The position numbers were made by a program, and so were the translations under genes. The notes under the pieces are model-generated. The model searched no databases. It was given only the letters and a program-made list of their open reading frames with translations, and had not been told where the DNA came from. A stretch of DNA of 64,000 nt from Octopus sinensis (Eukaryota): the NCBI RefSeq assembly GCF_006345805.1, contig NC_043010.1:52514001-52578000 (forward strand), read 5' to 3'. Positions 4,053 through 27,125 of this stretch are shown here, piece by piece (position 1 is the stretch's first letter; each line of letters opens with the position of its first letter).

Positions 4053-4334
4053 GAGGCGCAACGGCCCAGTGGTTAGGGCAGCGGACTCGCGGTTTCGATT
4101 CCCAGACCGGGCGTTGTGAGTGTTTATTGAGTGAAAACACCTAAAAAGCTCCCTGAGGCTCCGGCAGGGGGTGGTGATCCCTGCTGTACTCTTTCACCAC
4201 TCTTTCTCTCACTCTTTCTTCTGTTGGCCTGCTCGCTTAGCCAGCGGGATGGCGTCATTCGAAGGCTAAAACAATGCGAACGCATTGTGACCAGCGATGT
4301 GTAGCAACGTCTGGTCGGTCTCGTGATCACGTGA
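4053..4334 (+). mobile_element. tRNA-derived SINE, family C, with 12-bp TSD
   Basis: Head GGCGCAACGGCCCAGTGGTTAGGGC..GGTTTCGATTCC; flanked by TATTAGTATGTA at 4041-4052 and 4335-4346. Second copy at 56268-56568. Confidence 0.88.
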
Positions 4335-4382
4335 TATTAGTATGTATATGTGTATATGATTACATTTTACTCAGCCTTATAA

Positions 4383-4900
4383 TTTGTGATGAAGAGTGGA
4401 TTCTGTACAATAATAAAAACATTCTTTGCAGTGGTTGGACTAAAATGAAGCACTCAAAACCTTCCCTGAACCTGAGCTCTTCAAAAAGAAAATGACTGTT
4501 TTGTGGTGTACTGCTGGACTCATCCACTATAACTTCTTAAAACTCGGAAAAACTATTATTGCAGAAACATATCATCATGAAATTGCCAAAATGCTACTCC
4601 TGCTTCTCAGACTGGTCAACAAAAAAGGGCCAATCATTCTTCATGACAATGCTCGACCACTTCAGAAGTTGAGAGAACCATGAAGTTCTTCCCCACCAGC
4701 TTATTCCCCAGACCTTTCTCCTACCGACTACCACATTTTCAAGTATCTCGATAGTTTCCTGCGAGAGAAGAAATTCAAAAATAAATAAAAAGGCTGAAAG
4801 TGTGTTCAAAGAGTTCATCAGTTCCAGAACTCCAGATTTTTATGTTACCGGAATAAACAAACTTTAACTCGTTGGCAAAAATATGCTGATTGTAATGGTA
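4383..4900 (+). mobile_element. Mariner transposase pseudogene fragment
   Basis: CDEEWILYNN, VLWCTAGLIHYNFL, ILHDNARP and PDLSPTDYHIFKYL motifs across frameshifts. Confidence 0.85.
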
Positions 4901-4902
4901 CT

Positions 4903-5200
4903 TCAGCGGACTCGCGATCGGATGATCGCGGTTTCGATTCCCAGACCGAGCGTTGTGTGTGTTTATTGAGCGAAAACACCTAAAAGCTCCACGAGGTTCT
5001 GACAGGGGGTGGTAGCGACCCCTGTTGTACTTTTTCGCCACAACTTTCTCTCACCCTCTCTTCCTGTTTCTTGAGTAACGCTACGATGGACTGGCGTCCC
5101 GTCCAGCTGGGGGGGGGGCACTTACGTCATAGAAACCAGGAAACCGGGCCCATGAGCCTGGCTAGGCTTGAAAAGGGGGCATTTTTAATGGTACTTCCTT
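4903..5200 (+). mobile_element. SINE with a family-C head and a V-domain-like body
   Basis: 4903-5060 matches the family C head; it continues with CGATGGACTGGCGTCCCGTCCAG, which resembles the V-SINE central domain. Confidence 0.7.
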
Positions 5201-5547
5201 TGATGAATAAAATTTCCGCATTGTTGAAATATATTGTGATGTATGTTTCAAAATGTTGATTACATTTTACTCAGCCTTATATATATATATAATATATATA
5301 TATATACGACTGGATTCTTTCAGTTTCCGTTTACCAAATTCACTCACACTGCTTTAAATGTGGTTACCCATGTAATGACGGGTTTTTTTTCTCTTTTTAC
5401 TATATAACGTTAATGAATTGATTATGGTAGAATTAACGTGAAGTATATATTCTGTGAAATATGGTCTGATTTAGCAGGCTCTTTGCGTTACTACCCGGGG
5501 AGTATCCACTTACAGGTATTACTGAAATGATACTGATGCAGTGTAAT

Positions 5548-5890
5548 ATATATTTTGCTTGTTTCAATCATTAGATTACGGTCAAGCTGGGGCACCGCCT
5601 CGGAGACTTTTAATCGAATGAATCGAACACAGCACGGTTTTCATTTGTTACGGGGACGTAAACACATCAACACCAGCGGTCAAGCGATGGTTGAAGACAA
5701 ACACACACACACACACACACACGCACACACATATATGCGGCGAGATTCTTTCTGTTTCTATCTTCCAAATCCCTCACAAGTCTTTGGTTGGCTTGAGGCT
5801 ATCATAAAAGACACTTGCACAAGCTACCACCTATTGGGACTGAACCCGAAACCATGTGATTGGGAAGCAAGCTTCTTGCCACACAGCCAC
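5548..5890 (-). mobile_element. Degenerate SINE, family B (CORE-like)
   Basis: Diverged match to 11317-11753. Confidence 0.8.
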
Positions 5891-6181
5891 ATAGTGTTTT
5901 ATGTATTTAATATTCCGGCAATTTTGATCATTTTGCGTTGAGTTTGCAGTTTGAATTACTTTAACCAAATTTTAGCAGGCCGGATTTTTGATCATCACGA
6001 TACATCGCCAGCGACTCCCTGAAACTCTCCCCTGAAATCCCCGTTGAGAAATCTATATATATATTACTCAACTTATGTGTTTGTGTGTGTATCTGTGTGT
6101 GTGTCTGTGTGTGTGTCTGTGTGCTTAACGTTTGGATCTACCAAGTTTCATTATTAAAGATGGAAAGTAGTGTGTAGCAAA

Positions 6182-6570
6182 TCTATATATATAAAGCTGA
6201 AGTTGTCTGTGTGTGGCAGGTTTGGTAGCCTTCAACTAACACTATCTCCTTCGAGACCCTGCAGCGCAAGTTGACCAAAATTGAGAGTATGATAGAGGAA
6301 GGCTTGCTAGTCATTCTGTAGAAGATAAAATTCAAATCGGACCATGTTAACACCAAAAATTATTTACATCAAAAAGTTGCTTTTTTTCTATGAAAATCCC
6401 TATTTTTTACGATTTTTGACTGTTGCGTCACCATTTTGCGGTGTATTTCAACTGGAAAAATGTTCACTTGAAGAGAATAACAAGTTGCATAATGCAAAAT
6501 TTTTACTTTTCAAAAATTCCAATTCTAAAGGGTCGAAACAAACCCGAGCAACACCGGGTAATACTGCTAG
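6182..6570 (+). mobile_element. Non-autonomous Helitron
   Basis: A^TC 5' end, subterminal hairpin ACCCGAGCAACACCGGGT, CTAG^T 3' end, no TSD. Another TC-start 5' fragment lies at 6052-6180. Confidence 0.85.
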
Positions 6571-6766
6571 TATACACACATATATATACATATATAATAT
6601 ATATATATATTATATACCTATATATATATATATTATATATACTATATAATATACATTAATATATATACATATATATCATATATATATATATAGATAATAC
6701 ATATAAATATTATATATATATATCATATCCATATATATATATATATCTAATATAATATCATCTATC

Positions 6767-6799
<33 letters not shown>

Positions 6800-6800
6800 G

Positions 6801-6900
6801 NNNNNNNNNNNNNNNNNNNNNNNNNNNNNNNNNNNNNNNNNNNNNNNNNNNNNNNNNNNNNNNNNNNNNNNNNNNNNNNNNNNNNNNNNNNNNNNNNNNN
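6801..6900. other. Assembly gap (100 N) inside a (TA)n tract
   Basis: Direct reading. Confidence 1.
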
Positions 6901-6956
<56 letters not shown>

Positions 6957-7277
6957 TATATGTGTGTGTATGTATGTACTATATAGTATACTTACCAGTT
7001 TACGAGTTTTATTTATAATAAATATAAAAAGGTTAAACATTCATCTTGTGTGCGTGACAACGCCGCAACATGTGGTAACACTGGTTCTGACGCGTCAGCA
7101 CAGCGACGGAGTAAAATGACGGTATAAAGTTTTATTGCTACTATATGAAATTGTTGCTGTTTTACGAGTTTTCTCTTTACGAGCGATCTCTGGGAACAAA
7201 TCAACTCGTATATCGAGGCATTACTGTAGTTATTACTAGATATTCGATTTATTTATTAATATACTATTTCTAGCAAA

Positions 7278-7650
7278 TACTCTTTTACTCTTTTACTTGT
7301 TTCAGTCATTTGACTGCGGCCATGCTGGAGCACCGCCTTTAATCGAGCAACTCGACCCCGAGACTTATTCTTTTTGTAAGACCAGTACTTATTCTATCGG
7401 CCTCTTTTGCCGAACCGCTAAGTAACGGGGACGTAAACACACCAGCATCGGTTGTCAAGCAATGCTAGGGTGACAAACACAAACACACACACATATATAT
7501 ATATACATATATGACAGGCTTCTTTCAGTTTCCGTGTACCAAATCCACTCACAAGGCATTGGTCGGCCCGGGGCTATAGCAGAAGACACTTGCCCAAGAT
7601 GCCACGCAGTGGGACTGAACCCGGTACCAAGTGGTTGGTAAGCAAGCTAC
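7278..7650 (-). mobile_element. SINE family B body; its head is displaced to 9926-9958 by an insertion
   Basis: Matches other B copies but stops at GTAGCTTGCTTACCA; the missing GGAGTGGCTGTGTGGTAA head is at 9940-9958. Confidence 0.92.
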
Positions 7651-7953
7651 TTTATTTCAATTTATTTGCCACTTAGGGCATAACACAGAGGTAGCAGTAG
7701 CTCCGGGCTGGACACGGACATTAATGGATGATGGTGGTGGTGGATGAAGATGGTGATGGGAGAAGTCAGAAAGCGCCCGTCGACTTTTGCTTCTCTAAAA
7801 CAATGTTCTTTTTTTTCAATGGTTTACAATGTTTTAAAATTTACAAAAAATTCCACAAAATTCAAAAATTTCAAAAAATTCCACAAAATATTCCAATTTA
7901 CAATTGAAAGTCTCTTCAGAGGCAACAAACCTCTGTTACAATATAACACAATT

Positions 7954-9144
7954 TCACGTCACCCGACCGACGAACTCTCTTGCCTTGGTGACGCAATCGT
8001 CCGTCGTCAGGTTTCCGCACACAGGTAAGACTTGCAAGAGATCCTCCGGGAAAGAATTCTCGATCCTGCACATATCATTTTCGAGTAGGACCTCCGCAGC
8101 AAGCTGCGAGGGCCACTCTGGATACTCCATGCAGGACCGAAGTCCCTCCCATTGGTTTCTCTTCCTCATCTTACCTATTTCGTTCTGTACTATTCCTCCT
8201 TTGTAAAAGAGGACCACATAAAATTTCTCCGGCATCACCGTTGCCGGAGAACACTTGGGAGTCGCCATCCGCAAATTACTATCCGCTGGTGGCGTCCCGT
8301 TCCTCTTTTTCTTCTTTTTACGCCGGGCCTCGGGAGGTTGAGGCTCCAGTGCTGTACGCACCGGGTCCTCTTTTTCTTCCGAAGCCTCCGGTTTCTTTGT
8401 TGGGTCGCCATTGCTCCCCACCTTTCTCTTTCTTTTGGAGGAGGATTTTTCCCCCTCCTCACTTTGTTTCTCTCCCTCCACTGGTGGGGCAGGGAGAGGC
8501 TCTGATATTAGCTCCTCCAGGATCCTACCTTGGTTCCTGGGGCAGCTCTTCTTGATGTGGCCGGTTTCCGAACACAGGTGACACTTGGGGGCGCGTCCCT
8601 CAAGCATCACCGGATACTTGGATCCGGCCATCTTCAAGAAGTCTGGCAAAACCAGACTCTTGGCCGACTGGGTCCACAGAGTCAAAGTGGCCTTTGACCC
8701 TTCCCAGTTAGCCGCAGGCTGAATTTTCACGTTTAGGATCTTGGCGCTACCACCACTCAGACCCCGGCGGATGGAATCTTCCACCCACTCGGGCTCAAAG
8801 CCGGGCGGCAGGCCACAGACCCACAAACGTAACAATTTTCCCCCCTTGTAACTGGGGAGAAACAGAATTTCATCGCTCTCAATTGGCTGGCTTGCAAATT
8901 TGCAAGCTGCTTCGGCGGAGTCAAATAGCAACCATACCGTTGCGTATTTGACTCCCCGTTGAATATGTTTAACAGCTGGCATATAATCTGCCAGCTCGTT
9001 CACAATGGTATCTCTTGGAAAAACCATTATGGTGTCGAGTGACTTTGAAAATGTTCTCAGCACCACGGTTCTTTCCTCGAGTTCGTGTAAATATTTTTTG
9101 GGAGGTGTTAACTCCCACACAGTAAAATTCTTTGCCTTTGCCAT
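7954..9144 (-). CDS. LINE ORF1p/gag-like nucleic-acid-binding protein, 396 aa
   Basis: Uninterrupted ORF with a CX2CX4HX4C knuckle (CHLCSETGHIKKSC), an N-terminal region that looks RRM-like, and basic runs KRKRK and RRKKKKKR. Confidence 0.85.
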   Translation of the reverse strand: MAKAKNFTVWELTPPKKYLHELEERTVVLRTFSKSLDTIMVFPRDTIVNELADYMPAVKHIQRGVKYATVWLLFDSAEAACKFASQPIESDEILFLPSYKGGKLLRLWVCGLPPGFEPEWVEDSIRRGLSGGSAKILNVKIQPAANWEGSKATLTLWTQSAKSLVLPDFLKMAGSKYPVMLEGRAPKCHLCSETGHIKKSCPRNQGRILEELISEPLPAPPVEGEKQSEEGEKSSSKRKRKVGSNGDPTKKPEASEEKEDPVRTALEPQPPEARRKKKKKRNGTPPADSNLRMATPKCSPATVMPEKFYVVLFYKGGIVQNEIGKMRKRNQWEGLRSCMEYPEWPSQLAAEVLLENDMCRIENSFPEDLLQVLPVCGNLTTDDCVTKAREFVGRVT

Positions 9145-9500
9145 AACGTAAAATACAATAGTTCAAAATGATAAACTAAAATTAGCCACAGAAAGGAGAA
9201 TGAAAAATGCAACAAAAGGGAAGAAATAAAATTTAAAATGGCAGTTCAAAAAAAGTTTTTACAAATAAATAATAGACAGAGGAAGAGAGTTCAAATCAGG
9301 CAAAGGAATTCAGTTTTCTTTTTTTTTTTTTTTTTTTTTTTCACACTTCTTCGGCCAAAATGGTAATCCAGGCCAAATGCACTTGATAAACCTTGGTAAA
9401 TAATCCTTGGTAAAACCCTTGGTAAATAATCCTTGGTAATCCGTGGACACACAATGACAATTTCAAAATAATTTTTCCAGACGGACTAAGCCACTTCAAA

Positions 9501-9896
9501 AATACAATTTCTTTCCACTCGACACAGACAGAAAAATTATATCTGGAGCAAAGTGGAGCCCTATTACTTGCTAAAAATTTTAAATGCTAAAAAACATTCA
9601 TGCAAGCAATAAAACTTCACTTCGCTCGCAAAAACACAAAATTCCTACCCGTGGTCGAGACGAAAGTTCAGCAATTTACGTTGAAACAACGCGACATCAA
9701 TACAATTTCTTTTCGCTCGACACAGGCAGAAAAACTATATCTGGAGCAAAGTGGAGCCCTATTACTTGCTAAAATATATTTAATGCTAAAAAACATTAAT
9801 GCAAGCAATAAGACTTCACTAAACTCCCAAAAATACAAAGTTCCTACCTTTAGTCGAGACGAAAGTTCAACAATTCACGTTGAAACAACGCGACAT
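9501..9896 (-). repeat. Two 198-bp tandem monomers in the 5' UTR of the ORF1-only element
   Basis: Units start AATACAATTTCTTT at 9501 and 9699 and both end GAAACAACGCGACAT. Confidence 0.92.
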
Positions 9897-9958
9897 TTGC
9901 CGGAGCAAAAAACAACACGTCTGTATGGTAAGAAGCTACTTACCACACAGCCACTCCT

Positions 9959-10245
9959 TTATTTTTTCACCGCTGTCTAAAACTAATTGACTTTTGACCT
10001 TTGAAGAAGGAGGTGCAGTGGGAGGCAGCTATGACAAGGGTGGTAGCTGTCATGCAGAATCTGTCGTCTGCTTTAGTGAATACGCTCGTGAAACAAAGTT
10101 TTTATTTTATATTATTTATTTATTTATTTTTCACCGATGTCTAAAACTAATTGACCTTTGACCTCTGAAGAAGGAGGTGCAGTGGGAGGCAGCTATGACA
10201 AGCGTGGTAGCTGTCATGCAGAATCTGTCGTCTGCCTCAGTGAAT
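9959..10245. repeat. ~122-bp direct duplication
   Basis: 9959-10081 and 10124-10245 share TCACCG(C/A)TGTCTAAAACTAATTGAC...GCAGAATCTGTCGTCTGC. Confidence 0.85.
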
Positions 10246-10401
10246 TGCTTTTCTCCTTCCATAGACGCTGGACAACGCATGCAGATATGGCGCAGTACAA
10301 TAGTGAGACTGTGAGAAGTGCTGATATGAAATGCAACAAAAATCTCCCTCAACACCAACAACAATGGCAACAACAGAAACTAAGAACCAAGAAGAAAAAT
10401 A

Positions 10402-10682
10402 GGATCTTTTCCTTTTGAACGGCAGTTTTCAACACAATTTTAAACTTCGTATACTGGTAGAATGTGTTTATAAAACATCATTTTTTCTTGGCTTTATTGA
10501 GAAAATTCGGATCTTTTCCTTTTGAACGGCAGTTTTCAACACAATTTCTATATAGAATTTTCTCAATAAAGCCAAGAAAAAAATGATGTTTTATAAACAC
10601 ATTCTACCGGTATACGAAGTTTTAAAGTGTTTAGTTAACTAGAAATTGTGTTGAAAACTGCCGTTCAAAAGGAAAAGATCCG
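10402..10682. mobile_element. MITE with (C)GGATCTTTTCCTTTTGAACGGCAG TIRs plus a partial duplicate
   Basis: TIR pair bounds 10508-10682; a partial copy lies at 10402-10507. Relatives at 22370-22501 and 55937-56090. Confidence 0.8.
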
Positions 10683-10988
10683 AAAAATAATAGTGTTAGC
10701 ACAAATAGTTAAAAAAGGAACGAGAATGTCAGCAAGTCTAAGGAAACTAAATAACTACAACTTCGTCAATAAGAAGAATGTAATAATAATAATAACAGTG
10801 ACTCCGAAATAGCGACAGCAATATCAACGGACATGTCGAATTAATTGCTCACTGAGACGTGAATTCACCTACAGTTGTTTGAATAGAAAAATGACAAGGG
10901 CGCAAAAGCCATTTTTCATTGTGAGTACAAAAGTACGTGAAGTGTGAGGTAGTGCATTTGGTACCCTCCAGAACAATCACCTGCAGGT

Positions 10989-11190
10989 CTATATTTAAGA
11001 GATGAGGAATTATGTACATTATTTACTAACATTATTTATATTCGACGGATATTTGTCCTCATCTTGTTTGTTGTTAACACAAACGTTTCGGCTGATTTCA
11101 GAAGGCTGGAGGGTATATCAGCCGAAACGTTGTGTTAACAACAAACAAGATGAGGACAAATATCCGACGAATGTAAATAATGTAAATAAT
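10989..11190. mobile_element. Inverted duplication of a Penelope-like terminal repeat
   Basis: The left arm is the reverse complement of the right arm; same family as 44890-45060; carries the 3' half of a hammerhead (GGCTG..CAGCC GAAACGTT). Confidence 0.7.
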
Positions 11191-11316
11191 CACCTGTAGT
11201 TGTGTGATAAAAAAAAAAAATGATGATGTGGATTGGGACAAAACCATTTCTTTGTTGCAGTTAGAAGTACCTGAAGAATGGAAGTGGTGCCACAAAAGGC
11301 AAACAGTGTGTTTCCA

Positions 11317-11520
11317 TACTCTTTTACTTGTTTCAGTCATTTGACTGCGGCCATGCTGGAGCACCGCCTTTAATCGAGCAACTCGACCCCGGGACTTATT
11401 CTTTTGTAAGCCCAGTACTTATTCTATCGGTCTCTTTTGCCGAACCGCTAAGTAACGGGGACATAAACACACCAGCATCGGTTGTCAAGTAATGCTAGGG
11501 GGACAAACACAGACACACAA

Positions 11521-11579
<59 letters not shown>

Positions 11580-11753
11580 CATACATATATACGACAGGCT
11601 TCTTTCAGTTTCCGTTTACCAAATCCACTCACAAGACTCTGGTCGGCCAGAGGCTATAGTAGAAGACACTTGCCCAAGGTGCCACGCAGTGGGACTGAAC
11701 CCGGAACCATGTGGTTGGTAAACAAGCTACTTACCACACAGCCACTCCTGCGC
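11317..11753 (-). mobile_element. Full SINE, family B (tRNA head, CORE-like domain, internal TA/TG microsatellite, CR1-like tail)
   Basis: Head GCGCAGGAGTGGCTGTGTGGTAAG..GGTTCAGTCCC; CORE-like GGCACCTTGGGCAAGTGTCTTC. Confidence 0.92.
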
Positions 11754-11930
11754 CTATTCCAATGGATAATTTTTTTTTTTTACCATTCCTTTGTTTTCTA
11801 CAATGGAGATTATAATTCTGAAAAAAATTTTTTGCTTTACATTTTTGCTCCCTGAACATCATTCTTTGCTCTTTCTTTTCCTTCCCTGTGAGGTTGTGAT
11901 AGCAGTTTCAAAATTTCACCTGCTAATGAA

Positions 11931-12100
11931 GCGCAGGCGTGGCTGTGTGGTAAGTAGCTTGCTTACAAACCACATGGTTCCAGGTTCAGTCCCACTGCGT
12001 GACAACTTGGGCAAGTGTCTTCTGCTATAGCCTCGGGCCAACCAATGCCTTGTGAGTGGATTTGGTAGACGGAAACTGAAAGAAGCCTGTCGTATATATG

Positions 12101-12133
<33 letters not shown>

Positions 12134-12350
12134 ATATGTTTGTGTGTTTGTCCCCCTAGCATTACTTGACAACCGATGTTGGTGTGTTTACATCCCCGTC
12201 ACTTAGCGGTTCGGCAAAAGAGACCGATAGAATAAGTACTAGGCTTACAAAAGAATAAGTCCCGGGGTCGAGTTGCTCGATTAAAGGTGGTGCTCCAGCA
12301 TGGCCACAGTCAAATGACTGAAACAAGTAAAAGAGAGTAAAAGAGTAAGA
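11931..12350 (+). mobile_element. Full SINE, family B
   Basis: Inverted near-identical partner of 11317-11753. Confidence 0.92.
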
Positions 12351-12962
12351 GAATGGAAGTTTATTCTGAAGTTAGGAAGAGAAGGAAAAAAACTCCAACT
12401 CCTGTGTACCTGAGTAATATTTTAAATTCTTATCAACGTGTTTCGTTGATCTACTAAAGTGAATATTCATAATGTACCACCAAATTTTAAATCAGTAATT
12501 TTGGTGGAAGTTATAGAGGAACTAGGGGAAATAATCCTCAATCTTCCTTACATGTAAAATACCTTGAGATGGAGGTTCTTCTTACATGTAAAACTTTGTA
12601 GAAATTTCATTCTAATTCCAAATGGAGACATACAAAACATGATAATAATAAAAGACAGAAAGGAAGCCAAAGGGATTTCACTGCAGTGTCACTAACCAAC
12701 TTATGCATTTTCAGTTTCCTTGTCATGTAACAGCTACAAAACTTCCCTAATAACATCAAATGAGAAAACAACACTAACACAATCGACATCAACAGCCACA
12801 ACAATAAATTGCTAAAAAAAAAGCATAATAAATTGGTTAAACAGCTTAATAAATTGCTCAAAAGACAAACACTTGTACTACCTACAAAGGTGGTGAAAGG
12901 TGCCCTCTCCTAAACAACACAAACAATAAAACTCGTGCTGACATATCTGCCTTTCTCAGATA

Positions 12963-13145
12963 CCTATTTCTTTACTGCCCACAAGGGGCTACACACCGAG
13001 GGGACAAACAAGGACAGACAAACGGATTAAGTCGATTATATCGACCCCGAAAGGATGAAAGGTAAAGTCGACCTCGGTGGAATTTGAACTCAGAACGTAA
13101 CGGCAGACGAAATACGGCCACCTATTTCGTCCGGCGTGCTAACGC
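12963..13145 (-). mobile_element. SINE family A with an internal deletion
   Basis: Reverse match to 236-466. Confidence 0.85.
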
Positions 13146-13497
13146 TTCATCTATCCATGAAACTGAATTAATTATATATGAAATATAATTCGATTAATAC
13201 AATTAATACATTAAAAACGTTAAAAAAAAAGTTAAAATATTTCACAACAGTATATACGCATACTCAACCATCAATATACATATATACATCAGCTTTTAAT
13301 CAGACTGGAAAAAGAGAAAGATCCTTCAAACCTGAAAACTTTGTGGGTCTAAAGTCACCTGGAGAATGGTGGGAGTGTGACTGATCTGCAAGATGAAAAA
13401 ATAAGAACAACAGCTGCAATAGCAAGAACTTGGACAAACACTTCTCAACTTCATTGTTCGTTCATGAGAACGTCGTAGCAATGATAGAATTCATAAA

Positions 13498-13728
13498 AGG
13501 CGGCGAGCTGGCAGAAACGTTAGCACGCCGGGCGAAATACTTTGCGGTATTTCGTCTGCCGTTACGTTCTGAGTTCAAATTGCGCCAAGGTCAACTTTGT
13601 CTTTCATCCTTTCGGGGTCGATTAAATATGTACCAGTTACGCACTGGGGTCGATATAATCGACTTAATTTCTTTGTCTGTCCTTTTTTGTCCCCTCTATG
13701 TTTAGCCCCTTGTGGGCAATAAAGAAAT
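13498..13728 (+). mobile_element. SINE family A
   Basis: Match to 236-466. Confidence 0.9.
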
Positions 13729-14079
13729 AAGAATTCGTAAAATTACAAACGGAAATAAAGCAAATAGGAAGGTGAGAGGAACCAACTCCTCCTAAAAGTG
13801 ACTAAATGAGAAACTCCTGTTGAGGACAATACTTGGAGTATATAGAACTATAAAAGAGAAATTACCAATGGACCTGGGAAATTCATAAAGACCCCAGCAC
13901 TAAAAATGCTGGAGGGGTCTTTTAAGGAACTAAAAATGTACAATGCACCTCAACAAGAACTATAAGGTAAGTGGTATTTTCTCTTGTTATTTAGAGCAGC
14001 ATTGAGTGTGGTTTGTATGAATGCACAAGGTGGCCCAGGCAAGCGTTTGGAAGCTGGTTCATATACTGAAAGACCGCAA

Positions 14080-14570
14080 GATACTAAACATATATCACAT
14101 TTTATGGCATACAAACTGGCATAGTTTGTGGTGTAAACATTCAAACACCATCGTTGTCTTTCTAAATCCCACAGCATATCACAAGGAATCTTTAGTTCTT
14201 CAAGGTTGTTTTAATGTATATGTCAACCTATTTTGGGGGGTGGGTGGGGGTGTAAATTTTGATCAGAAAAATTCAACTTGTATGCAAGAAAATACAGTAT
14301 GTAAGAGCAATGTTTCTATGTTGCATGATCTTAAGCTCTTAAATGACTATAAGGTTTACACCTCGCATAAATAAATGTAGTAAGGGGATAGTGCTAGAGA
14401 ACAATTGGAGAAGGAACTGGGAGGAAGTGAACTGCAAAAAAGTTATTTGTAGAGGCATCATATATGAAATACAAGCATCAAGAATGTGTACTGACCATTT
14501 CTTTGACATGAGACATAAATATTGCATTGTTTGAATCCATATTCTTAGACTTAAAATGAAAAGGAAAAAC
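14080..14570 (-). pseudogene. Possible highly decayed piggyBac-like transposase C-terminus
   Basis: MQYLCLMSKKWSVHILDACISY and a frameshifted Cys-rich end (PCD..RKTTMVFECLHHKLCQFVCH) resemble the piggyBac KW..HLLD region and CRD. Weak. Confidence 0.3.
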
Positions 14571-15002
14571 ATTCAAAGCATCGAGGTAGAAGTGCAATGG
14601 GCAACAAAGTCACAATCTGGTCTTTGACAGACCACAACTGCATGCAATTGAATTCCAGGTAGATTTGAGTTGTTTGTCAGTGACACTTTTCCTGACTATT
14701 TGTGGGAGGCAATGGAATGGACACAGTGAACTTCATAGCCCATCTCAATTATTGCTAGAAGTGGAATGTTACAGAAAATTGATAATGGCAGCTGAAATGT
14801 GGGAGTTACTGCCTGATTGTGGGAAGGAAATTTGGTTAGGTTTGAACAGTCTACTTTACGATCTTTATGCTAATGTGCCAGACTTACTCACCACTGTTCA
14901 GGTAGATGCCTATCAAAGAAGCAGGAGACAACATTTCCAGTTCTGTTTGCCAGGGAATGGCAATGTTGTTAAGTAAGGATAAGGGAAATTGGGACATTAT
15001 GA

Positions 15003-15460
15003 TTGATTGATTGATTGATTCTAGTTTCAGCTTATGAGCTGTGGCCATGCTGGGGCACCGCCATTTGGTGTTGCCACTTGGTTTCACTTCATGGAGGCTT
15101 TCTAGCAACTGCTATTTGGTGCATGAGAGAGTTCGATGCAGCTGCCCTCATCTGCCCTCCTGCCGTGAGTTGGTTCATCTGGGACACCTGACAGGAAGAG
15201 ATCCAGCTTCATTTTAAAGACATCTGTATCCACCCCATGCAGGTCTCTCAGGTTCTTCGGGAGGATATTGAAGAGCTGTGGGCCTCGGAGCCCAGGCTAT
15301 CACAGTATCTTGTCCTACATCTTGATGGCAGGTTTGGAGTCCTAGGCACCATGCAGTGGCGCCCAGTTCTGGCATTTGCGTAACTCTCGATGCCAAAGTT
15401 CAGGACACTTCCCTCCAGGATCTTCCAGATGTATATTATGGCATATCTTTCCCGCATATC
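15003..15460 (-). mobile_element. CR1-group LINE 3' fragment with (CAAT)n tail
   Basis: RERYAIIYIWKILEG and GPQLFNILPKNLRDL..FKMKLDLFLSGVPDEP, typical of the CR1 ORF2 C-terminus. Confidence 0.85.
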
Positions 15461-15527
15461 TTTATTATGGATAAAAGTTTATAATCACTACCATTTCACC
15501 CAAAATTAAAATGTAAATATGCATATA

Positions 15528-15900
15528 CTCTTACTCTCTTTTTACTCTTTTACTTGTTTCAGTCATTTGACTGCGGCCATGCTGGAGCACCGCCTTTTAG
15601 TCGAGCAAATCGACCCCGAGACTTATTCTTTGTAAGCCCAGTACTTATTCTATCGGTCTCTTTGGCCGAACCGCTAAGTGACGGGGACGTAAACACACCA
15701 GCATCAGTTGTCAAGCAATGCTAGGGGTACAAACACAGACACACAAAATATATGTATGTATACATATCTGTATATATGTGTGTGTGTGTGTGTGTGTGTA
15801 TGCATATATATATATATATATATAAATATATCCATACACACACACATGACGGGCTTCTTCCAGTTTCCATCTTGCAAATCCCCTCATAAAGCTTTAGTCT
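15528..15900 (-). mobile_element. SINE family B, 5'-truncated
   Basis: Match to other B copies. Confidence 0.88.
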
Positions 15901-17450
15901 GCTATATGAAATTTTTTTATATATATTTGTTAAATATACATTAACTGCTGGTAGTTACTATAATTAAAACCCCAGGATTTTCTACCTCACTTTCTCCAAT
16001 TTTGTCTATTCTTTGTGTAAGCACATGTGTATGCACGTAGTCATCTATGAATGTGTGTACATGTGTCTCCCCTCACATCCTCCTCCCCCTCTTCTATCAC
16101 CCGTATTCTGGTATACCACCTTCTGCATAAAATGTATAATTACAATGTATAGCAGCATGCAATGAACAAAATACTGAATTTTTTTTGTTAAAATACCGAG
16201 CATATGATCCAGTGGCTTATGGGAATGAATGAACATTATAAAGCTTCAAAATGCCAATTATGTTTCTGGTATTTCTTATTGACACACACACACACATATA
16301 TATATAAACAAATGTATGAATATGTATGTATATATACACATGTGCACATATACATATATAGGAAACCTTTTCTTTGTGCCTTATGTCTCTTATTGACACA
16401 GATATTATTCAATCTTCTACCTTTCTTTTCATGTAGTATTCTTTTGAGTGGCATGGGAAGTGACAAGAGTTTATGACACACTTTTACCACCTCTTCCAAT
16501 GGATCCTTCTATCTACTACATATTACTAATATTTTATCTAAACAACCCATACCACCTGCAGTTTTTAGCGAAGTGATCAATATTTGATTCTCATGACCAG
16601 CCAACCTAATTCTGCATTTGACTACTCAGTTTTGAACTGCTAAACATTATTATTGCATTTCCTTGATTTGAATTTTAAACCTTAAAAACTCCATTCATAC
16701 ATTTCTATACATACATACTGTTTTGAATGCCCATTACTTCAATAAGATACACATTTTCCATGACAGTAGATAAATTTTTTATTCCACAACAAATTTATAG
16801 TGGCTTCATGCAGGCATGGCATGGATTCAATCCTTGATTGCCTAATTTCATTTAACACTTCAACAGTGCTTTTCTCATGGTAAAACAAGTTTTCTGTGGA
16901 TGGCAGCAGTTAAACATTTCTCAGATACCTACACTAAGCAGAATGTCTTTGCCACTTGATCCCTCTAACCTCTTCTAGGCCACCAGGGGCAGTAATGGAG
17001 GTAACATACCTCCAACGAAATCATTTATTCTCAACAATATGTCTATTTTTTTGGCTGCTTTTCAATAGTTATAAAAATAAGAACTCTGTAAGCTAAAGGT
17101 AGTTACTGAGAACGACCATCAGTGAGTGTGAAAGTTATTATTGCACTTTCTTAAACATTAAACACTTCATTTATTTATTTATATACATAAATACTACCTT
17201 TATACATTACCTTTAATAAATTAGCCTGCATAAAGTTCACCTTTAAAATGCCATGACGAGTCAGAGTACTTTCTCACCTACCTCCAACAATCCCCCCCCT
17301 CCTCCAGCAGACAGTTCTTTTGTATCTTCTCGCAACAGAAAATACACCTTTTGTGGCAGTTATAATGAAATTGCTTTCTTATATCAGAGTAATAAGGCAT
17401 TTAATCTTTGCCCCCCCGCCGGGAATTACCAGGTACACTAGCTAGTATAC

Positions 17451-17503
<53 letters not shown>

Positions 17504-17717
17504 GTGTATATATATATATAAGGCAAGATGTGTGTGCGTACATTTTTATAATTGAACATATTTACCCCCGGAATTACCGAGTACAGGTAGTATATATATA
17601 TATATATAATATATATATATATAATGTATATATATATATATATATAATATATATATATATTATATATATATATATATATACATACATATATGTGAGTGTA
17701 CGTACATATATATATTG

Positions 17718-17902
17718 TGGTATTTCGTCCGCCGCTGCGTTCTGTGTTCAAATTCCGCCGAGGTCGACTTTGCCTTTCATCCTTTCGGGGTCAATAAATA
17801 AAGTACCAGTTTTGCACTGGGGTTGATGTAGTCGACATAATCCCTTTGTCTGTCCTTGTTTGTCCCCTCTATATTTAGCCCCTTGTGGGCAGTAAAGAAA
17901 TA
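17718..17902 (+). mobile_element. SINE family A, 5'-truncated, inside (TA)n
   Basis: Match to 236-466. Confidence 0.85.
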
Positions 17903-18018
17903 TATATATATATTATACACACATACATATGTATATTATACACACACACACATATATATATTATACACACACACACACATATATATATATTATACACCAC
18001 ACACACACATATATATAT

Positions 18019-18052
<34 letters not shown>

Positions 18053-18081
18053 TTATATACATATATATATGTAAATACACA

Positions 18082-18294
18082 CAAAGTAGTGCTGAAAAGT
18101 TCCTGACTTTAAGGGTACAGCAAAAGGCACTGGCTGGAGGCCCAACCTTCCCGCCTCTTTTTTACAAGACTTAGGAAAACTGAAAGACTGCTGCAATAAC
18201 TGAGTAACTATGAGAAAGGAATATGTTGAATAATTAACTGATCCTCTTGTATTTTTTTTTTTACCAAAAGCCAGGAACTTTTCTGAACCCCGTC
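18082..18294 (+). mobile_element. ~210-bp mariner-derived MITE
   Basis: TIR GTGCTGAAAAGTTCCTG / CCAGGAACTTTTC; interior matches 20833-21038. Confidence 0.8.
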
Positions 18295-18329
18295 ATAGCT
18301 GTCAAGTACTGTGATCATTACAGTTATAT

Positions 18330-18675
18330 AATACTCTTTTACTTGTTTCAGTCATTTTGACTGCGGCCATGCTGGAGCACCGCCTTTAATCGAGCAACTC
18401 GACCCCGTGACTTATTCTTTTGTAAGCCCAGTACTTATTCTATCGGTCTCTTTTGCCGAACCGCTAAGTGACAGGGACATAAACACACCAGCATCGGTTG
18501 TCAAGCAATGCTAAGGGGAGAAACACACACACACACAAACATACACGCACACATACATATATATATATATATACATATATACGACGGGCTTCTTTCAGTT
18601 TCCATCTACCAAATTCACTTACAAGGCTTTGGTTGGCCCGAGGCTATAGTAGAAGACACTTGCCCAAGGTGCCAA
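18330..18675 (-). mobile_element. SINE family B; a more degenerate copy follows at 18770-18960
   Basis: Match to other B copies. Confidence 0.88.
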
Positions 18676-19109
18676 TAATCTAAAACAATTATTTGAATCA
18701 CACACTTAATATTTGACTATATACAAATGGTTGAAATATGCAGTAATGTTTGGACAGCACACTGTTCTTTTATCTTCTAAATGTTACAGTCATTAGATTG
18801 CAGCCATGCTGGAGCACAGCCTTGAAGAATTTTAACAGGATAAATTTCCTCGAGCAGTTATTCTATAAGTATTTTTTGCCAAACTGCTAAGTTACAGATC
18901 TATAAACATACCAACACCAATTGTCAAATGGGATGGGGGATGATGACAAACACAGACACAAATACAACACATCATCAATATTTAATGTCCATTTTCCATG
19001 CTGGCATGGGTTAGATGGCTTGGCAAAAACTGCCAGCTCGCCACATTAATAATAGTAATAATGATGATGATGATAACAATAATTAATAATAATAAGAAGA
19101 AAGGAAATA

Positions 19110-19483
19110 ATGAACATGAATGATAATCGATGTAGCATTCTCCAGTGACAACAGGATCAATGTGAAAGGAAAATAAAAAATAAACAGCTATGATGATTTG
19201 AAATGGGAAATATGAAGGTTGTTGTTAATGAAGAGAGTAGATGTTATACAAATAGTAATTGGTACACTTTGAAGCATCAGCACTCAACTACCAACATGGC
19301 TGAAAAAGATTGGTGCAAGTGTGAAGGTAGAACCCCTTCAAATATCAGCATTGCTTGGAACTGCAAAAATTCTTTGCAGGGATCTTCAAGCATGACCGGT
19401 AAACAAGTGTCACCTTAGTCTGCTGGCTGTGGACAATAGACACCATCATACCCAGCAAAATAAGCTATGAGTTTTCATAGAAT
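19110..19483 (+). mobile_element. Decayed Dong-type RLE 3' fragment (third family) between TAA tracts
   Basis: IIDVAFSSDNRI..YDDLKWEI..IVIGTL..LQISALLGTAKIL. Confidence 0.78.
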
Positions 19484-23305: not shown

Positions 23306-26300
23306 GACCACGTATCCGAAAATTGAACCAAATCCTGATTGAAAAATCAGTTACTGGATCAAATCTTCCCAACACACAGGAGCTGGACGAACCCCACAAC
23401 CGGAATATTCCAACAGATGGCCATCCATGCTCATCACCAAATAATCAAAAGAAAAAGAAGGAAAAATGGTCTAGGGAAGATAATAAAGAAGTTCTCGAGG
23501 CCTTCTACCATGCCATATATTTCCCCACAGATAAGTCTAGCACTGTACAAGCATACTTAAACTGGAGACAGAAACACCCTGAAGTAAGACCCTACATAGA
23601 CAGTAACAAGCTTGCCAATGTTAGAAGAAACATTATAAAAAAGAAATTACTGACTGAAGTAGAGATTGATCAGGTTAGACAAGCAATATCGGATAAAATG
23701 AACGAAGCTGCAGCTAGAGAAGATAATACAGAGGAAATGATTATAGACCAGCCCAGGGCGGATAAAAACGAAGAGAGGATTGAAAGAGTTAGTATAAGTG
23801 ATAGGCAAAGTGAAATACGCCCTGAACCAATCATAAACACTAAGACAGATGTGCATCAAATAGATAAAGAAAGTCACACAAATATTGACCCAACAGAACT
23901 ACATGAGCTAAAAAATCAAATCATGATTGAATGGCTGAAATTAAGAAACCAGCATGGATGAGCGTGATACACTTCCTAAAATCCGCAACTCTCACCAAAA
24001 CATGAAAATAATTGGTAAAATCCGGCTTGCACTTAAGGATATAATTCAGTTAATGATGTTGATATCACAAACCTCAACCACCTATACTATGCATCCGCGA
24101 AAATCTCAACGATCCTATGTGGTGTAAAGATTAGAAAACGGCAACAGTCCCACAAAAAGCCTTCTTGGCAAGAGCGTCTGCAACAACAAATTAAAGTATT
24201 TAGATCTGACATTGATATTTGAAAAACCTTAAGGCTCACAAGGCTACCAAACCTACAAAAACCCAAAAATTACTGAAAAAATACAATATGAAAACTATAC
24301 TTGATATTGATGCCACCATAGAAACCATCAAACAAAAGGTATCTGCCAAAGCTACCCGCATAGCGAGGTATGAAAGCGTGTTAGATTTTTCAAGGACAAC
24401 AACATGTTCAAAAAAATAACACCAAGAATTTTTACAGGAAGATAGGAAAAACAGCGTTTACTGCAGGGTCTGTACCATCAAAAGAAGAAGTGCAGAGATT
24501 TTGGAATAAAATCTGGGCAGAAGAAAAAACACACAACGAAAAGGCCCCCTGGATTGACAGAATATCTACAGAACTGGACCCCTTAGAAGAGCAAAAGTGG
24601 GAGGGTGTCAAGGTAGAAGATATAAGATCTGCTCTCAGGAGGTCAAGCAAATGGAAGTCTCCAGGAAAGGATAAAATTCCTAACTTCTGGCTGAATGCCT
24701 TCCCAGAGAGCCATGAACTGCTAACAGACTGTACAATGATGTTCTGCAACACCCTAGTAGGATGCCTCCTTGGCTAGTTAATGGGTTAACATTCCTGCTT
24801 CCAAAAAGTGAAGAAACAAATGAACCAAAAAACTATAGACCCATAACCTGCTTAACAACTATGTACAAAACTCTAACATCTGTCCTGACGGAATATACCT
24901 ATAGTTTTTTAACAGACAGCAGCATATTCCCTAATGAACAGAAAGGATGTAAACGTGGATCCTACGGCTGTAAAGACCAACTACTCATCAATAAGATGAT
25001 CTTAGAAGATTGTCACAAACGACACAAAAACTTATCAATAGCCTGGATAGACTATAAAAAGGCTTTTGATAGCCTACCACATAGCTGGATTAGGAAATGC
25101 CTTGAAATGTATAAGATAGCACCAACTCTGCGAAACTTCTTGACTGTAAGTATGAGATCATGGAGAACCACACTAACTCTGACAGTGACAGTGAATCCCT
25201 AAATGCTGGTGATGTAAAAATTTCGTGTGGCATTTTCCAGGGTGACTCACTGTCACCACTCCTCTTTTGTTTATCCTTAATACCTCTCTCAAAGCTGCTC
25301 AATGACGTGCAGTACGGGTATAAAATGTTTGATAAAAATATAAATCATCTCGTTTACATGGATGATTTAAAGCTTTTTGCAAAAAATGATCAACAACTCA
25401 AGGGCTTACTAGCGATAGTCAAACAATTCAGTGACGACATCAGAATGCAATTCGGCCTCGATAAATGTGCAAAGGCTACCTTTATCAAAGGAAAAATGAC
25501 AGACAACACTAACGTTAACCTTGACCAACAGAATGTCATAAAAGAACTAGACCCAGCGGAGAGCTACAAGTACCTAGGGGTAATTGAAGGGAACGGAATA
25601 AGGCATTCAGAGATGAAGGAAAGGATCAGGGAGAATGCTATCGAAGAGTGAGAGCAATACTCAAGACAGAGCTGAATGCAAGAAACAGGATCGAAGCAAT
25701 CAATGCATTAGCTATACCAGTCGTGACTTACAGTTTCAATATGTTAACTGGTCAATTACTGAAATATGTCAGCTCGACAGAAAAATAAGGAAACTGTTGA
25801 CAATGCATAGAATGCACCACCCTAAGGCAGATACAGAACGACTCTATCTGCCAAGAAAAGAGGGAGGCCGTGGTCTTTTACAACTGGCAATAACAATGAA
25901 GATTGCTACAATTGGCCTAGATACCTACCTGAAAAACTCTGAGGACTGGATGTTAAACTTGTCTCAAAACATGAAAACAAGAAAGCATCATACTCAGTCA
26001 CAAAACAGGCAAAGGAATATCTAAGTGAATTCCGAATACAACCAATTTCGGAATTAGAGATAGACATACAAGAAACAAGCACAGAAAAAGCTAGGCGCAT
26101 GAAAACCCGTGCCAAAACTGCGGCCTTAGATATTCTGAATAATAAATGGCAAGAAAAACCTCTCTACGGCAAATACCCAAAGAGAGCGAATAATGCAGAT
26201 ATCGACAAAGCCCTGACCCATCAATGGCTAATGGCCTCTGGCTTAAAATCTGAAACAGAGGGGTTTATCATAGCAGCTCAAGATCAATGCCTACCAACAA

Positions 26301-27125
26301 GAAACTACCAGGCCAACATATTAAAGATCAGAAGCAGTCCAACGTGTCGTGTATGCAAGCAACAAAATGAAACCATTGACCATGTGGTCTCCAAGTGCAG
26401 TCTTCTAGCGCCTACAGAGTATTTCAACAGGCACGATAGAGCTGCACAATATATTCACTGGGTAATCTGTAAAAACCTGGATTTGCCCCATGAAAAAAAC
26501 TGGTGGGAACACAAACCACCCCCAGTGCTTGCAAATGACCACATCTCACTCCTCTGGAACTTCACCATTCAAACTGACAGGAAGATAGATGCAAATAGGC
26601 CAGACATCATATTGAAAGACTTCAAACAAAGAACATGCCTCCTCATTGATATGACTGTCCCAATCGATATAAACGTATCTGTCAGGACCTACCAAAAACT
26701 GAGCAAATATAAAGATCTTGAATAGAAATCAGCAAAATGTGGAAGCTGAAGACTAAAACAATACCTGTTGTCATAGGTGCCCTGGGAATGATAGCAAAAG
26801 GGGCTGATAGCTACCTAACTCAGATACCAGGAAACCCAAAAATGGCAGAAGTTCAAAAGATAGTGCTCATGGGAACTGCTCATATCCTACGCAAAATACT
26901 CTCTATGTAACCTCAAGGTTAAAACAACCATAATTTTCGGTTTAAAAAAAAAAAAAAAAAAAAAACCTTTTTTTTTAGACATTCATTAGTACAACATCCC
27001 CACCCCCCAAATATATGGCACACTAGGCATAACAACAACATGAACTTCCAACCCTGTTTTCTCTTGAGGTCTCTGGGTGAGACTTGGAGCCAACTTGTAC
27101 AAATATAAAGCAAAAGTCAAACATA

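What the first reader, a model, noticed from the sequence alone, without database searches (positions are those of the whole stretch)
7636..9939. ORF1-only (half-LINE) retroelement with an intact ORF and its own TSD
Seen: a 2275-bp insert bounded by a ~15-bp TSD. It has 5' tandem monomers, one uninterrupted 396-aa CCHC-knuckle ORF, a ~300-nt 3' UTR and an AATAAA-rich end, with no room for ORF2. The TSD shows the unit inserted at this size, so it is not a full LINE that later lost ORF2 in place. Known: HAL1 elements are L1-derived and encode only ORF1. Inference: this is an independent invertebrate half-LINE, probably Tx1-derived, that brings its own RNA-binding protein and borrows RT in trans. 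It is the only long intact ORF among otherwise decayed elements.
Basis: partly seen in the sequence, partly recalled or inferred. Interest (0 to 1): 0.88.

Follow-up and report, generated by a model that had tools for sequence, protein, structure and literature searches.

The report
Octopus LINE copy carrying only ORF1
A 2.27-kb retrotransposon copy in an octopus-type genome carries only the RNA-binding first gene of a LINE and no reverse transcriptase, and it sits at a specific spot inside a common SINE; this resembles mammalian HAL1 and fly HeT-A, but I could find only one complete copy.

Summary
The insert lies on the minus strand at 7653-9926 and interrupts an otherwise continuous SINE copy. 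It is bounded by a 16-bp target-site duplication with one indel. It has two 199-bp 5' monomers, an intact 396-aa ORF and a 300-nt 3' UTR, and no ORF2.

The ORF is a LINE ORF1 protein: two tandem RRM-like domains, a CCHC knuckle, a basic linker and a C-terminal region. Distant homologs (23-30% identity) in Octopus vulgaris, O. sinensis and Argonauta hians sit 5-40 nt upstream of an APE-RT-zf-RVT ORF2 of the L1 superfamily.

The only close relative (O. sinensis, 61% aa identity, dN/dS 0.23) starts at the same position of the same SINE, in unrelated flanks. This suggests site-specific insertion, as known for the Tx1 clade. That copy is truncated before the ORF end, so the ORF1-to-3'UTR junction is seen only once.

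No partner LINE with a matching 3' end was found, and Tx1 membership was not tested by phylogeny.

Verdict: partly supported. It is a plausible independent ORF1-only LINE derivative, but not shown to be a propagating family. HAL1 and HeT-A are precedents. Interest is moderate.

The parts
7336..7652 (-). Host SINE copy, larger part (body and tail), interrupted by the insert
   Evidence: 88% identical to intact SINE copies in the window. The alignment continues across the junction once the flanks are joined.
7637..7652 (.). Target-site duplication, copy next to the element's 3' end (GGTAAGCAAGCTACTT on the + strand)
   Evidence: This sequence occurs once in intact SINE copies.
7653..9926 (-). 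The whole insert: an ORF1-only LINE-derived unit of about 2274 bp
   Evidence: Bounded by the duplication inside a continuous SINE. No second copy in the window.
7653..7953 (-). 3' UTR of 300 nt. It holds a 28-bp tandem repeat (7836-7890) and one AATAAA (7661-7666) 8 nt from the end. There is no A-tail.
   Evidence: No ORF2 remnant: tblastn negative, and an HMM of ORF2 N-termini scores no better than shuffles.
7954..9144 (-). Intact ORF1, 396 aa plus stop
   Evidence: Homologs. dN/dS 0.23 against the O. sinensis relative.
8602..9072 (-). Two tandem RRM-like domains (about aa 25-181)
   Evidence: AlphaFold2 on a 57-sequence alignment gives pLDDT 84-97 in this region. Foldseek top hits are IMP3 RRM12, NONO/SFPQ, hnRNP A1 UP1 and Npl3. 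Pfam RRM models do not hit.
8542..8583 (-). CCHC zinc knuckle, CHLCSETGHIKKSC (aa 188-201)
   Evidence: Pfam zf-CCHC scores 17.4 bits, below the 20.8 cut-off. The three Cys are invariant or nearly so in the family alignment. A profile of the core hits retroviral nucleocapsid knuckles in PDB.
8245..8532 (-). Basic, low-complexity linker with KRKRK and KKKKKR runs (about aa 205-300)
   Evidence: Modelled with low confidence (pLDDT 49-64 over aa 221-290, lower beyond). Relatives have an equivalent linker.
7957..8244 (-). C-terminal region (about aa 301-396) with ENSFPEDL at the place of the family motif FPxDVG
   Evidence: The alignment places the motif correctly, but hhalign is not significant (E=0.28) and the model is poor here. 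Homology is suggestive only.
9145..9926 (-). 5' UTR of 782 nt
   Evidence: The last ~105 nt before the ATG and the monomer region align with the O. sinensis copy.
9501..9896 (-). Two 199-bp tandem monomers, 89% identical; putative promoter (inferred)
   Evidence: TRF score 650; self-BLAST. The O. sinensis copy has one homologous monomer.
9314..9341 (-). A28 run (sense strand) inside the 5' UTR; unexplained
   Evidence: Absent from the O. sinensis copy.
9386..9439 (-). 14-bp tandem repeat, 4 copies, in the 5' UTR
9927..9941 (.). Target-site duplication, copy next to the element's 5' end (GGTAAGAAGCTACTT; one base missing)
9927..9960 (-). Host SINE copy, short part (about the first 33 nt of the presumed SINE head)
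   Evidence: The same SINE stretch ends at the same place in front of the O. sinensis copy.

Best explanation
The insert is a non-autonomous, ORF1-only derivative of an octopod LINE of the L1/Tx1 superfamily.

Shown:
- It was inserted as one unit by a process that makes a 16-bp target-site duplication, which is the signature of target-primed reverse transcription.
- It landed at a defined position in the head end of an abundant SINE.
- It encodes a complete LINE ORF1 protein: two RRM-like domains, a CCHC knuckle, a basic linker and a C-terminal region.
- It encodes no endonuclease and no reverse transcriptase.

Inferred:
- Its RNA is transcribed from the 5' monomers.
- The RNA is coated by its own ORF1p.
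- It is reverse-transcribed at the SINE site by ORF2p borrowed from a full-length relative. Such full-length LINEs, some with an intact 1132-aa ORF2, exist in Octopus genomes.
- The lineage has been propagating as an ORF1-only unit, not arising once. I consider this more likely than not, but it is not demonstrated.
For: - Ends and duplication inside a continuous SINE.
- ORF1p identity: the tandem-RRM fold is modelled with high confidence and matched by Foldseek, and the CCHC is conserved.
- 53 remote homologs were found. Every one of those I looked up that carries a source name (14 proteins) is a cephalopod protein.
- Homologous ORF1s lie 5-40 nt upstream of APE-RT-zf-RVT ORF2 in L003/L004, L006, L007, L008 and L009.
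- That ORF2 matches human L1 ORF2p at E=2e-71 and Pfam Exo_endo_phos, RVT_1 and zf-RVT.
- No ORF2 remnant lies in the 300 nt after the stop.
- Lineage evidence: the only close relative (P0001 at locus L001 in O. sinensis; 61% aa, 73% nt) shares the ATG-proximal 5' UTR and a homologous monomer. It starts at the same SINE position, and its flanks are otherwise unrelated.
- The chance of two independent insertions sharing SINE position and orientation is roughly 1e-4.
- dN/dS is 0.23 over 279 codons, with dS about 1.2. The ORF was therefore kept functional over a long divergence.
- No RT-like sequence lies within 10 kb downstream of the L001 copy.
- No ORF1 that is linked to an ORF2 is closer than about 30% to this ORF, among 5.8 billion protein clusters.
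- Tx1-clade elements are known to prefer specific sites inside other transposons, with about 16-bp duplications and tandem insertions (PMC4494074).
Against: - Only one complete copy was available. The O. sinensis copy is broken inside the C-terminal region, so the ORF1-to-3'UTR junction is seen once.
- The exact protein is not on record elsewhere, and no close relatives turned up in the metagenome scans.
- No full-length LINE shares the element's 3' UTR or 5' UTR at nucleotide level. No RT donor is identified.
- The 3' end has no A-tail, and AATAAA sits 8 nt from the end. This would also fit a prematurely terminated transcript.
- C-terminal domain homology is not statistically supported.
- Promoter activity of the monomers, expression and current mobility are all untested.
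Confidence: 0.5

Rival explanations
1. One-off dead-on-arrival copy. A full-length LINE of this lineage produced a transcript that ended shortly after ORF1, by premature polyadenylation or internal deletion in the RNA or master copy. That single RNA was retrotransposed, and no ORF1-only family exists.
For: - AATAAA lies 8 nt before the 3' end.
- Only one complete copy was found.
- Full-length relatives with ORF2 exist in octopods.
Against: - There is no A-tail at the 3' end, which a polyadenylated truncated RNA should leave.
- The 300 nt after the stop show no trace of the ORF2 start, although in relatives ORF2 begins 5-40 nt after ORF1.
- The 61%-identical O. sinensis relative also has no RT within 10 kb.
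- No ORF2-linked ORF1 is closer than about 30%.
Confidence: 0.28
2. A full-length LINE inserted here and ORF2 was removed afterwards by an internal deletion. The two ends and the target-site duplication stayed intact.
For: A target-site duplication cannot exclude internal deletion. The window is full of decayed and rearranged repeats.
Against: - The deletion would have had to start within a few tens of nt after the ORF1 stop while leaving ORF1 intact.
- It would also have had to remove all recognisable ORF2 coding sequence.
- The duplication is nearly perfect (15 of 16) and the ORF is intact, so the copy looks young.
Confidence: 0.1
3. A processed retrocopy, or a paralog, of a host gene that was domesticated from a LINE ORF1. 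It would be a cellular mRNA copied by LINE machinery and not a transposon lineage.
For: - NCBI annotates the O. sinensis relative as a gene, LOC115225585.
- dN/dS is 0.23.
- The layout is mRNA-like: 5' UTR, ORF, 3' UTR, AATAAA.
Against: - The O. sinensis 'gene' has lost the first knuckle cysteine, ends early and is truncated.
- The two copies are not syntenic but share the same SINE target position and a monomeric 5' region. That is transposon behaviour.
- There is no A-tail, and no intron-containing parent was found.
Confidence: 0.06

Closest known systems
HAL1 (half-L1) of mammals
   Same: A non-autonomous LINE derivative that encodes only ORF1p and depends on ORF2p supplied in trans. HAL1s arose several times independently (PMC5753468).
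   Different: HAL1 derives from mammalian L1, whose ORF1p is Type II (coiled coil, one RRM, CTD; Transposase_22). Here the ORF1p is Type I-like (two RRM-like domains + CCHC), the host is a cephalopod, and insertion seems site-specific. HAL1 is documented as multi-copy families; here there is only one complete copy.
HeT-A of Drosophila telomeres
   Same: An invertebrate non-LTR element whose single ORF encodes a zinc-knuckle Gag/ORF1-like protein and no reverse transcriptase. It is thought to use RT from TART (PMC1636488). It is also target-restricted, and its relatives form head-to-tail arrays.
   Different: HeT-A belongs to the Jockey clade, targets chromosome ends rather than an interspersed SINE, is promoted from the 3' end of the upstream element, and has a host-beneficial role. 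None of this is shown here.
Tx1-clade LINEs (Tx1, Keno, Kibi, crocodilian Tx1-Mar)
   Same: They belong to the L1 group and have an APE-RT-zinc-finger ORF2 and an RRM/CCHC-type ORF1. Many prefer a specific sequence inside another repeat, make about 16-bp duplications and insert in tandem (PMC4494074; PMC5203782). The octopod full-length relatives show the same ORF2 domains and tandem arrays.
   Different: Those elements are autonomous, with ORF2. Clade placement of the octopod relatives by RT phylogeny was not done, and a SINE-head target has not been reported in the papers read.
Fish LINE ORF1 proteins with Pfam RBD_ZCCHC3_1st and RBD_ZCCHC3_2nd domains (domains named after vertebrate ZCCHC3)
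   Same: Two RNA-binding domains followed by CCHC knuckle(s). In fish gene predictions this module sits in front of APE-RT-zf-RVT. The octopus ORF1 core profile aligns to it over 132 columns (hhalign E=1.5e-4).
   Different: The Pfam RBD_ZCCHC3 models do not hit the octopus proteins. The similarity is at the edge of detection.

Membership tests
LINE ORF1p, Type I (RRM + CCHC; Khazina and Weichenrieder scheme as summarised in PMC5203782) | At least one RRM domain | tested here: met
   The alignment-based AlphaFold2 model has pLDDT 84-97 over aa 11-220. The Foldseek PDB top hits are all tandem-RRM proteins at E of about 2e-4. Pfam RRM_1 does not hit this protein, so the support is structural only.
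LINE ORF1p, Type I (RRM + CCHC; Khazina and Weichenrieder scheme as summarised in PMC5203782) | CCHC zinc knuckle after the RRM(s) | tested here: met
   CX2CX4HX4C at aa 188-201. Pfam zf-CCHC scores 17.4 bits, below the 20.8 cut-off. The cysteines are conserved across the family, and the profile hits nucleocapsid knuckles.
LINE ORF1p, Type I (RRM + CCHC; Khazina and Weichenrieder scheme as summarised in PMC5203782) | The protein family is encoded as the first ORF of LINEs, directly upstream of an APE-RT ORF2 | tested here: met
   Met for homologs at 23-30% identity: L003/L004, L006, L007 and L008, L009. Not met for this copy itself, which has no ORF2.
Half-LINE / HAL1-like non-autonomous family | Unit encodes ORF1p and no ORF2p | tested here: met
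   300 nt of non-coding sequence lie between the ORF1 stop and the 3' end. No APE or RT similarity.
Half-LINE / HAL1-like non-autonomous family | Multiple copies with the same ORF1-to-3'UTR junction, each with its own target-site duplication | not testable with these tools
   No octopus genome could be searched at DNA level. There is one complete copy (window) and one diverged copy truncated before the junction (L001). No exact or near protein was found elsewhere.
Half-LINE / HAL1-like non-autonomous family | Derived from mammalian L1 (Type II ORF1p, Transposase_22); this defines HAL1 proper | tested here: not met
   No Transposase_22 hit. The architecture is two RRM-like domains + CCHC, and the host is a cephalopod. 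It is therefore not HAL1, only HAL1-like in logic.
Half-LINE / HAL1-like non-autonomous family | A partner LINE supplying ORF2p, usually recognisable by a shared 3' end | tested here: inconclusive
   There is no nucleotide similarity between the element's UTRs and the full-length LINE loci L002-L006. Only a few loci could be sampled. Full-length LINEs of the superfamily do exist in Octopus.
Tx1 clade of non-LTR retrotransposons | RT phylogeny places ORF2 within Tx1 and not L1 proper | not tested
   No reference Tx1 or L1 set was available. Only L1-superfamily affinity of the relatives' ORF2 is shown: human L1 ORF2p at E=2e-71 and zf-RVT. Names in the homolog search were uninformative. This copy has no RT to place.
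Tx1 clade of non-LTR retrotransposons | Target-sequence preference, often inside another repeat | tested here: inconclusive
   Two diverged copies (window and L001) begin at the same SINE position in the same orientation, with unrelated outer flanks. The chance estimate is about 1e-4. With only two copies, and one lacking its 3' junction, this is suggestive and not proof.
Processed retrocopy of a cellular mRNA | 3' poly(A) tail and an intron-containing parent gene | tested here: not met
   There is no A-tail at the 3' end. No parent gene was found among 5.8 billion protein clusters.

The most novel reading that the evidence does not exclude
Octopods harbour a Tx1-like LINE lineage that targets one position in the head of their most abundant SINE. 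That lineage has split off a self-propagating ORF1-only 'half-LINE', which keeps its own RNA-binding protein and promoter monomers and borrows RT from full-length relatives. This would be a third, independent origin of the HAL1 / HeT-A division of labour, possibly still active because the ORF is intact and the target-site duplication is nearly perfect.
Probability: 0.3. Interest if true: 0.62.

Novelty: new variant of a known kind. Interest (0 to 1): 0.45.

Why it matters
ORF1-only LINE derivatives bear on an open question: what ORF1p does for its own RNA (cis-preference, RNP formation), separately from ORF2p. Well-described cases are few: HAL1 in mammals and HeT-A in flies. An independent case would show that keeping ORF1 while losing ORF2 is a recurrent stable strategy. 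This one has a different ORF1 type (tandem RRM + CCHC), is in a mollusc and has an apparently defined SINE target. It would also give a compact 2.3-kb unit for retrotransposition assays. A LINE lineage that uses a SINE head as its landing site would in addition be a neat example of one repeat using another as a safe harbour. If it proves to be a single truncated copy, it is an ordinary by-product of LINE activity.

Tried and rejected
- ORF2 vestige: one frame of the 3' UTR reads LLPLKRLSIVNWNIL about 30 nt after the stop, which looked like the ORF2 N-terminus of relatives (MALLKVGSINVRGL). An HMM of eight ORF2 N-termini scored it -0.4 bits. 35 of 200 shuffles and 64 of 298 random window segments did as well. 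Rejected.
- Read-through idea: the A28 run in the 5' UTR suggested that the upstream 586 nt might be the 3' end of a preceding unit in a tandem array, as in L006. I rejected this because the O. sinensis copy shares both the monomer and the identical 5' junction with the SINE.
- Sequence-only searches of the ORF gave only the knuckle: Pfam and PDB.
- The single-sequence AlphaFold2 model was useless (pLDDT 43). The alignment-based model was needed.
- C-terminal domain homology by hhalign was not significant (E=0.28).
- Exact-protein look-up of the ORF found nothing.
- Two metagenome scans found nothing.
- An exact look-up of another window ORF, to identify the species or locus, found nothing.
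- Naming the ORF2 clade from database names failed, because the names were uninformative.
- ARAGORN and Rfam did not recognise a tRNA-like head in the SINE. The SINE orientation therefore rests only on A-box-like and B-box-like motifs that I read by eye.
- The window's own LINE ORF2 remnant (31900-33413) has no recognisable link to the element.
Full report
**What is in the sequence**

The feature lies on the minus strand. Read in the sense direction, it contains:
- a 782-nt 5' UTR (window 9926 down to 9145);
- two 199-bp tandem monomers, 89% identical (9501-9896);
- a 14-bp repeat in four copies (9386-9439);
- an A28 run (9314-9341);
- an uninterrupted 396-codon ORF (9144 down to 7954);
- a 300-nt 3' UTR that ends ...GGCAAATAAATTGAAATA (7653).

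There is one AATAAA, 8 nt from the end, and no A-tail.

The unit is flanked by GGTAAGCAAGCTACTT (7637-7652) and GGTAAG-AAGCTACTT (9927-9941).

The flanks are the two parts of one SINE copy. When joined in a script, they align without a break across the junction to five uninterrupted SINE copies elsewhere in the window. This paralogous empty site shows that the duplication is a true target-site duplication of 16 bp.

No other copy of the unit exists in the window. The ORF is the longest in the 64 kb.

**What the ORF encodes**

Sequence searches alone see only a weak CCHC knuckle (Pfam zf-CCHC 17.4 bits, below the 20.8 cut-off; PDB).

The word-indexed search of 5.8 billion protein clusters returns one relative. 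It is Octopus sinensis LOC115225585 (P0001): 281 aa, 61% identity.

An exhaustive HMMER scan of 1.84 billion cluster representatives finds 53 remote homologs (22-30% identity) covering aa 10-280. I looked up 20 of them, and every one that carries a source name (14 proteins) is a cephalopod protein. The species are O. bimaculoides, O. vulgaris, O. sinensis and Argonauta hians.

The family shares:
- a core of about 190 aa;
- an invariant CX2CX4HX4C knuckle;
- a basic low-complexity linker;
- in many members, a C-terminal region with the motif FPxDVG.

With a 57-sequence alignment, AlphaFold2 models aa 1-220 confidently (pLDDT 84-97 over aa 11-220). Foldseek matches tandem-RRM proteins: IMP3 RRM12, NONO/SFPQ, hnRNP A1 UP1 and Npl3.

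The protein is therefore two RRM-like domains followed by CCHC. This is the Type I LINE ORF1p layout that the literature associates with Tx1-like L1-group elements (PMC5203782).

The window protein has ENSFPEDL where the family has FPxDVG. Homology of that C-terminal region is not statistically supported (hhalign E=0.28).

**Link to LINEs**

In every case where flanking DNA of a homolog showed a complete element, the ORF1 homolog is followed within 5-40 nt by an ORF2. That ORF2 has Exo_endo_phos, RVT_1 and zf-RVT domains. The loci are:
- two contigs of an ENA assembly (L003 and L004);
- O. vulgaris L006, which includes an intact 1132-aa ORF2;
- O. sinensis L002 and L005;
- two short contigs, L007 and L008, where the ORF2 start (M..L..G.LNVRGL) is visible just after ORF1;
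- Argonauta hians L009.

The O. vulgaris ORF2 matches human L1 ORF2p at E=2e-71 over residues 3-868. The partners are therefore L1-superfamily LINEs.

Fish gene predictions with a related ORF2 carry Pfam RBD_ZCCHC3_1st, RBD_ZCCHC3_2nd and zf-CCHC in front of it. The octopus core profile aligns to that module at hhalign E=1.5e-4.

Whether the octopod elements are Tx1 proper was not tested, because no reference set was available. Database names were uninformative.

**This copy has no ORF2**

The 300 nt after the stop show no APE or RT similarity. A suspected vestige of the ORF2 N-terminus did not beat shuffled controls.

The unit was therefore almost certainly ORF1-only when it inserted. A later internal deletion that spared ORF1 and both ends cannot be excluded from one copy.

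**The one close relative**

The O. sinensis copy (locus L001) is 73% identical in nucleotides over the ORF. The similarity extends into the roughly 105 nt before the ATG and into one homologous 5' monomer.

Its 5' end abuts the same SINE stretch, ending at the same base:
- L001...GGCTGTGTGGTAAGTAGCTTGCTTCC, then the element;
- window...GGCTGTGTGGTAAGTAGCTT-CTTACC, then the element.

The outer flanks are unrelated. SINEs cover 6.3% of the window, so the chance that two independent insertions share SINE position and orientation is about 1e-4.

The simplest reading is site-specific insertion. Tx1-clade elements are known for this, including insertion into other transposons with about 16-bp duplications and tandem insertions (PMC4494074). 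The full-length octopod relatives indeed form head-to-tail arrays with a period of about 5.28 kb.

dN/dS between the two ORFs is 0.23, with dS about 1.2. The reading frame was therefore maintained through a long divergence.

The O. sinensis copy is itself decayed. It has lost the first knuckle cysteine, has a premature stop, and is broken inside the C-terminal region. It cannot show the ORF1-to-3'UTR junction. No RT lies within 10 kb downstream of it.

**SINE orientation**

The end of the SINE that abuts the element's 5' end carries A-box-like (TGGCTGTGTGG) and B-box-like (GGTTCAGTCCC) motifs. SINE and element are therefore probably co-oriented, and the target lies about 18-33 nt into the SINE head.

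ARAGORN and Rfam do not call a tRNA there. This is my reading of the sequence, not a tool result.

**How it most likely works**

Shown:
- insertion by target-primed reverse transcription at a SINE site;
- coding capacity for ORF1p only.

Inferred:
- transcription from the monomers, by analogy with monomeric LINE promoters;
- packaging of the RNA by its own ORF1p;
- reverse transcription by ORF2p from a full-length relative.

No donor with a matching 3' end was found among the few loci I could sample.

The main rival is a one-off truncated transcript of a full-length parent. It is favoured by the AATAAA near the end and by the single complete copy. It is disfavoured by three things: the missing A-tail, the absence of any ORF2 start, and the lack of any ORF2-linked ORF1 closer than about 30% identity.

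Post-insertion deletion and a host-gene retrocopy are less likely.

**Comparison and novelty**

Functionally, the element is like HAL1 (PMC5753468) and HeT-A (PMC1636488). It is a member of neither: the ORF1 type, LINE clade, host and target all differ.

If confirmed as a family, it would be a new variant of a known kind. If it is a single copy, it is an ordinary by-product of LINE activity.

The decisive test is a DNA-level census of copies and junctions in Octopus genomes. The tools available here could not run it.

Noticed in passing
L006 (O. vulgaris OX597840.1) 4300-19370; L002 (O. sinensis CM016867.1): Full-length LINEs of the related lineage stand in head-to-tail tandem arrays. In L006 the period is about 5.28 kb, there are three units, an A25 run lies between units, and one unit has an intact 1132-aa ORF2 at 6058-9456. 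L002 shows the same pattern.
   Followed up: partly
window 31900-33413 (minus strand): A 5'-truncated ORF2 tail of the same LINE superfamily, 46-54% aa identical to L006 ORF2 residues 696-1129. Its 3' end and target site were not resolved, and it has no nucleotide link to the ORF1-only unit.
   Followed up: partly
window 23323-26725 (plus strand): A second decayed non-LTR element: RVT_1 split over two frames and a zf-RVT fragment. It is only about 25% identical to the L006 ORF2, so it is a different lineage.
   Followed up: partly
window 9958-10080 and 10123-10245: A direct duplication of about 124 bp at 94% identity, immediately outside the SINE that hosts the insert.
   Followed up: no
window about 31030-31090 and 31340-31400: A direct repeat of about 45 bp, (AAATC)n...GATGAACATCAATGGAATTTGTATCTT, flanks an insert of about 270 bp. 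This is unusually long for a target-site duplication.
   Followed up: no
L010 (O. vulgaris OX597833.1) 7001-8140: Another ORF1 homolog (P0016, 379 aa, no C-terminal domain) with no ORF2-like sequence within 7 kb downstream. It is a second ORF1-without-ORF2 locus, but its element boundaries could not be defined.
   Followed up: partly
L001 (O. sinensis CM016886.1) 10001-10846: NCBI annotates LOC115225585 as a protein-coding gene. It is in fact a decayed copy of this element family: the knuckle cysteine is lost, there is a premature stop, and the 3' part is truncated.
   Followed up: yes
window 9314-9341: An A28 run (sense strand) sits inside the 5' UTR of the element, 170 nt upstream of the ATG. 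It is absent from the O. sinensis copy, and its origin is unexplained.
   Followed up: partly
window 6801-6900: A run of 100 N, which is an assembly gap, about 750 bp from the finding.
   Followed up: no
SINE copies, e.g. window 11935-12287 and 29429-29771: The target GGTAAGCAAGCTACTTACC is a short hairpin (GGTAAG / CTTACC arms) within the presumed tRNA-like head of an abundant SINE of about 350 bp. This SINE covers 6.3% of the window.
   Followed up: partly
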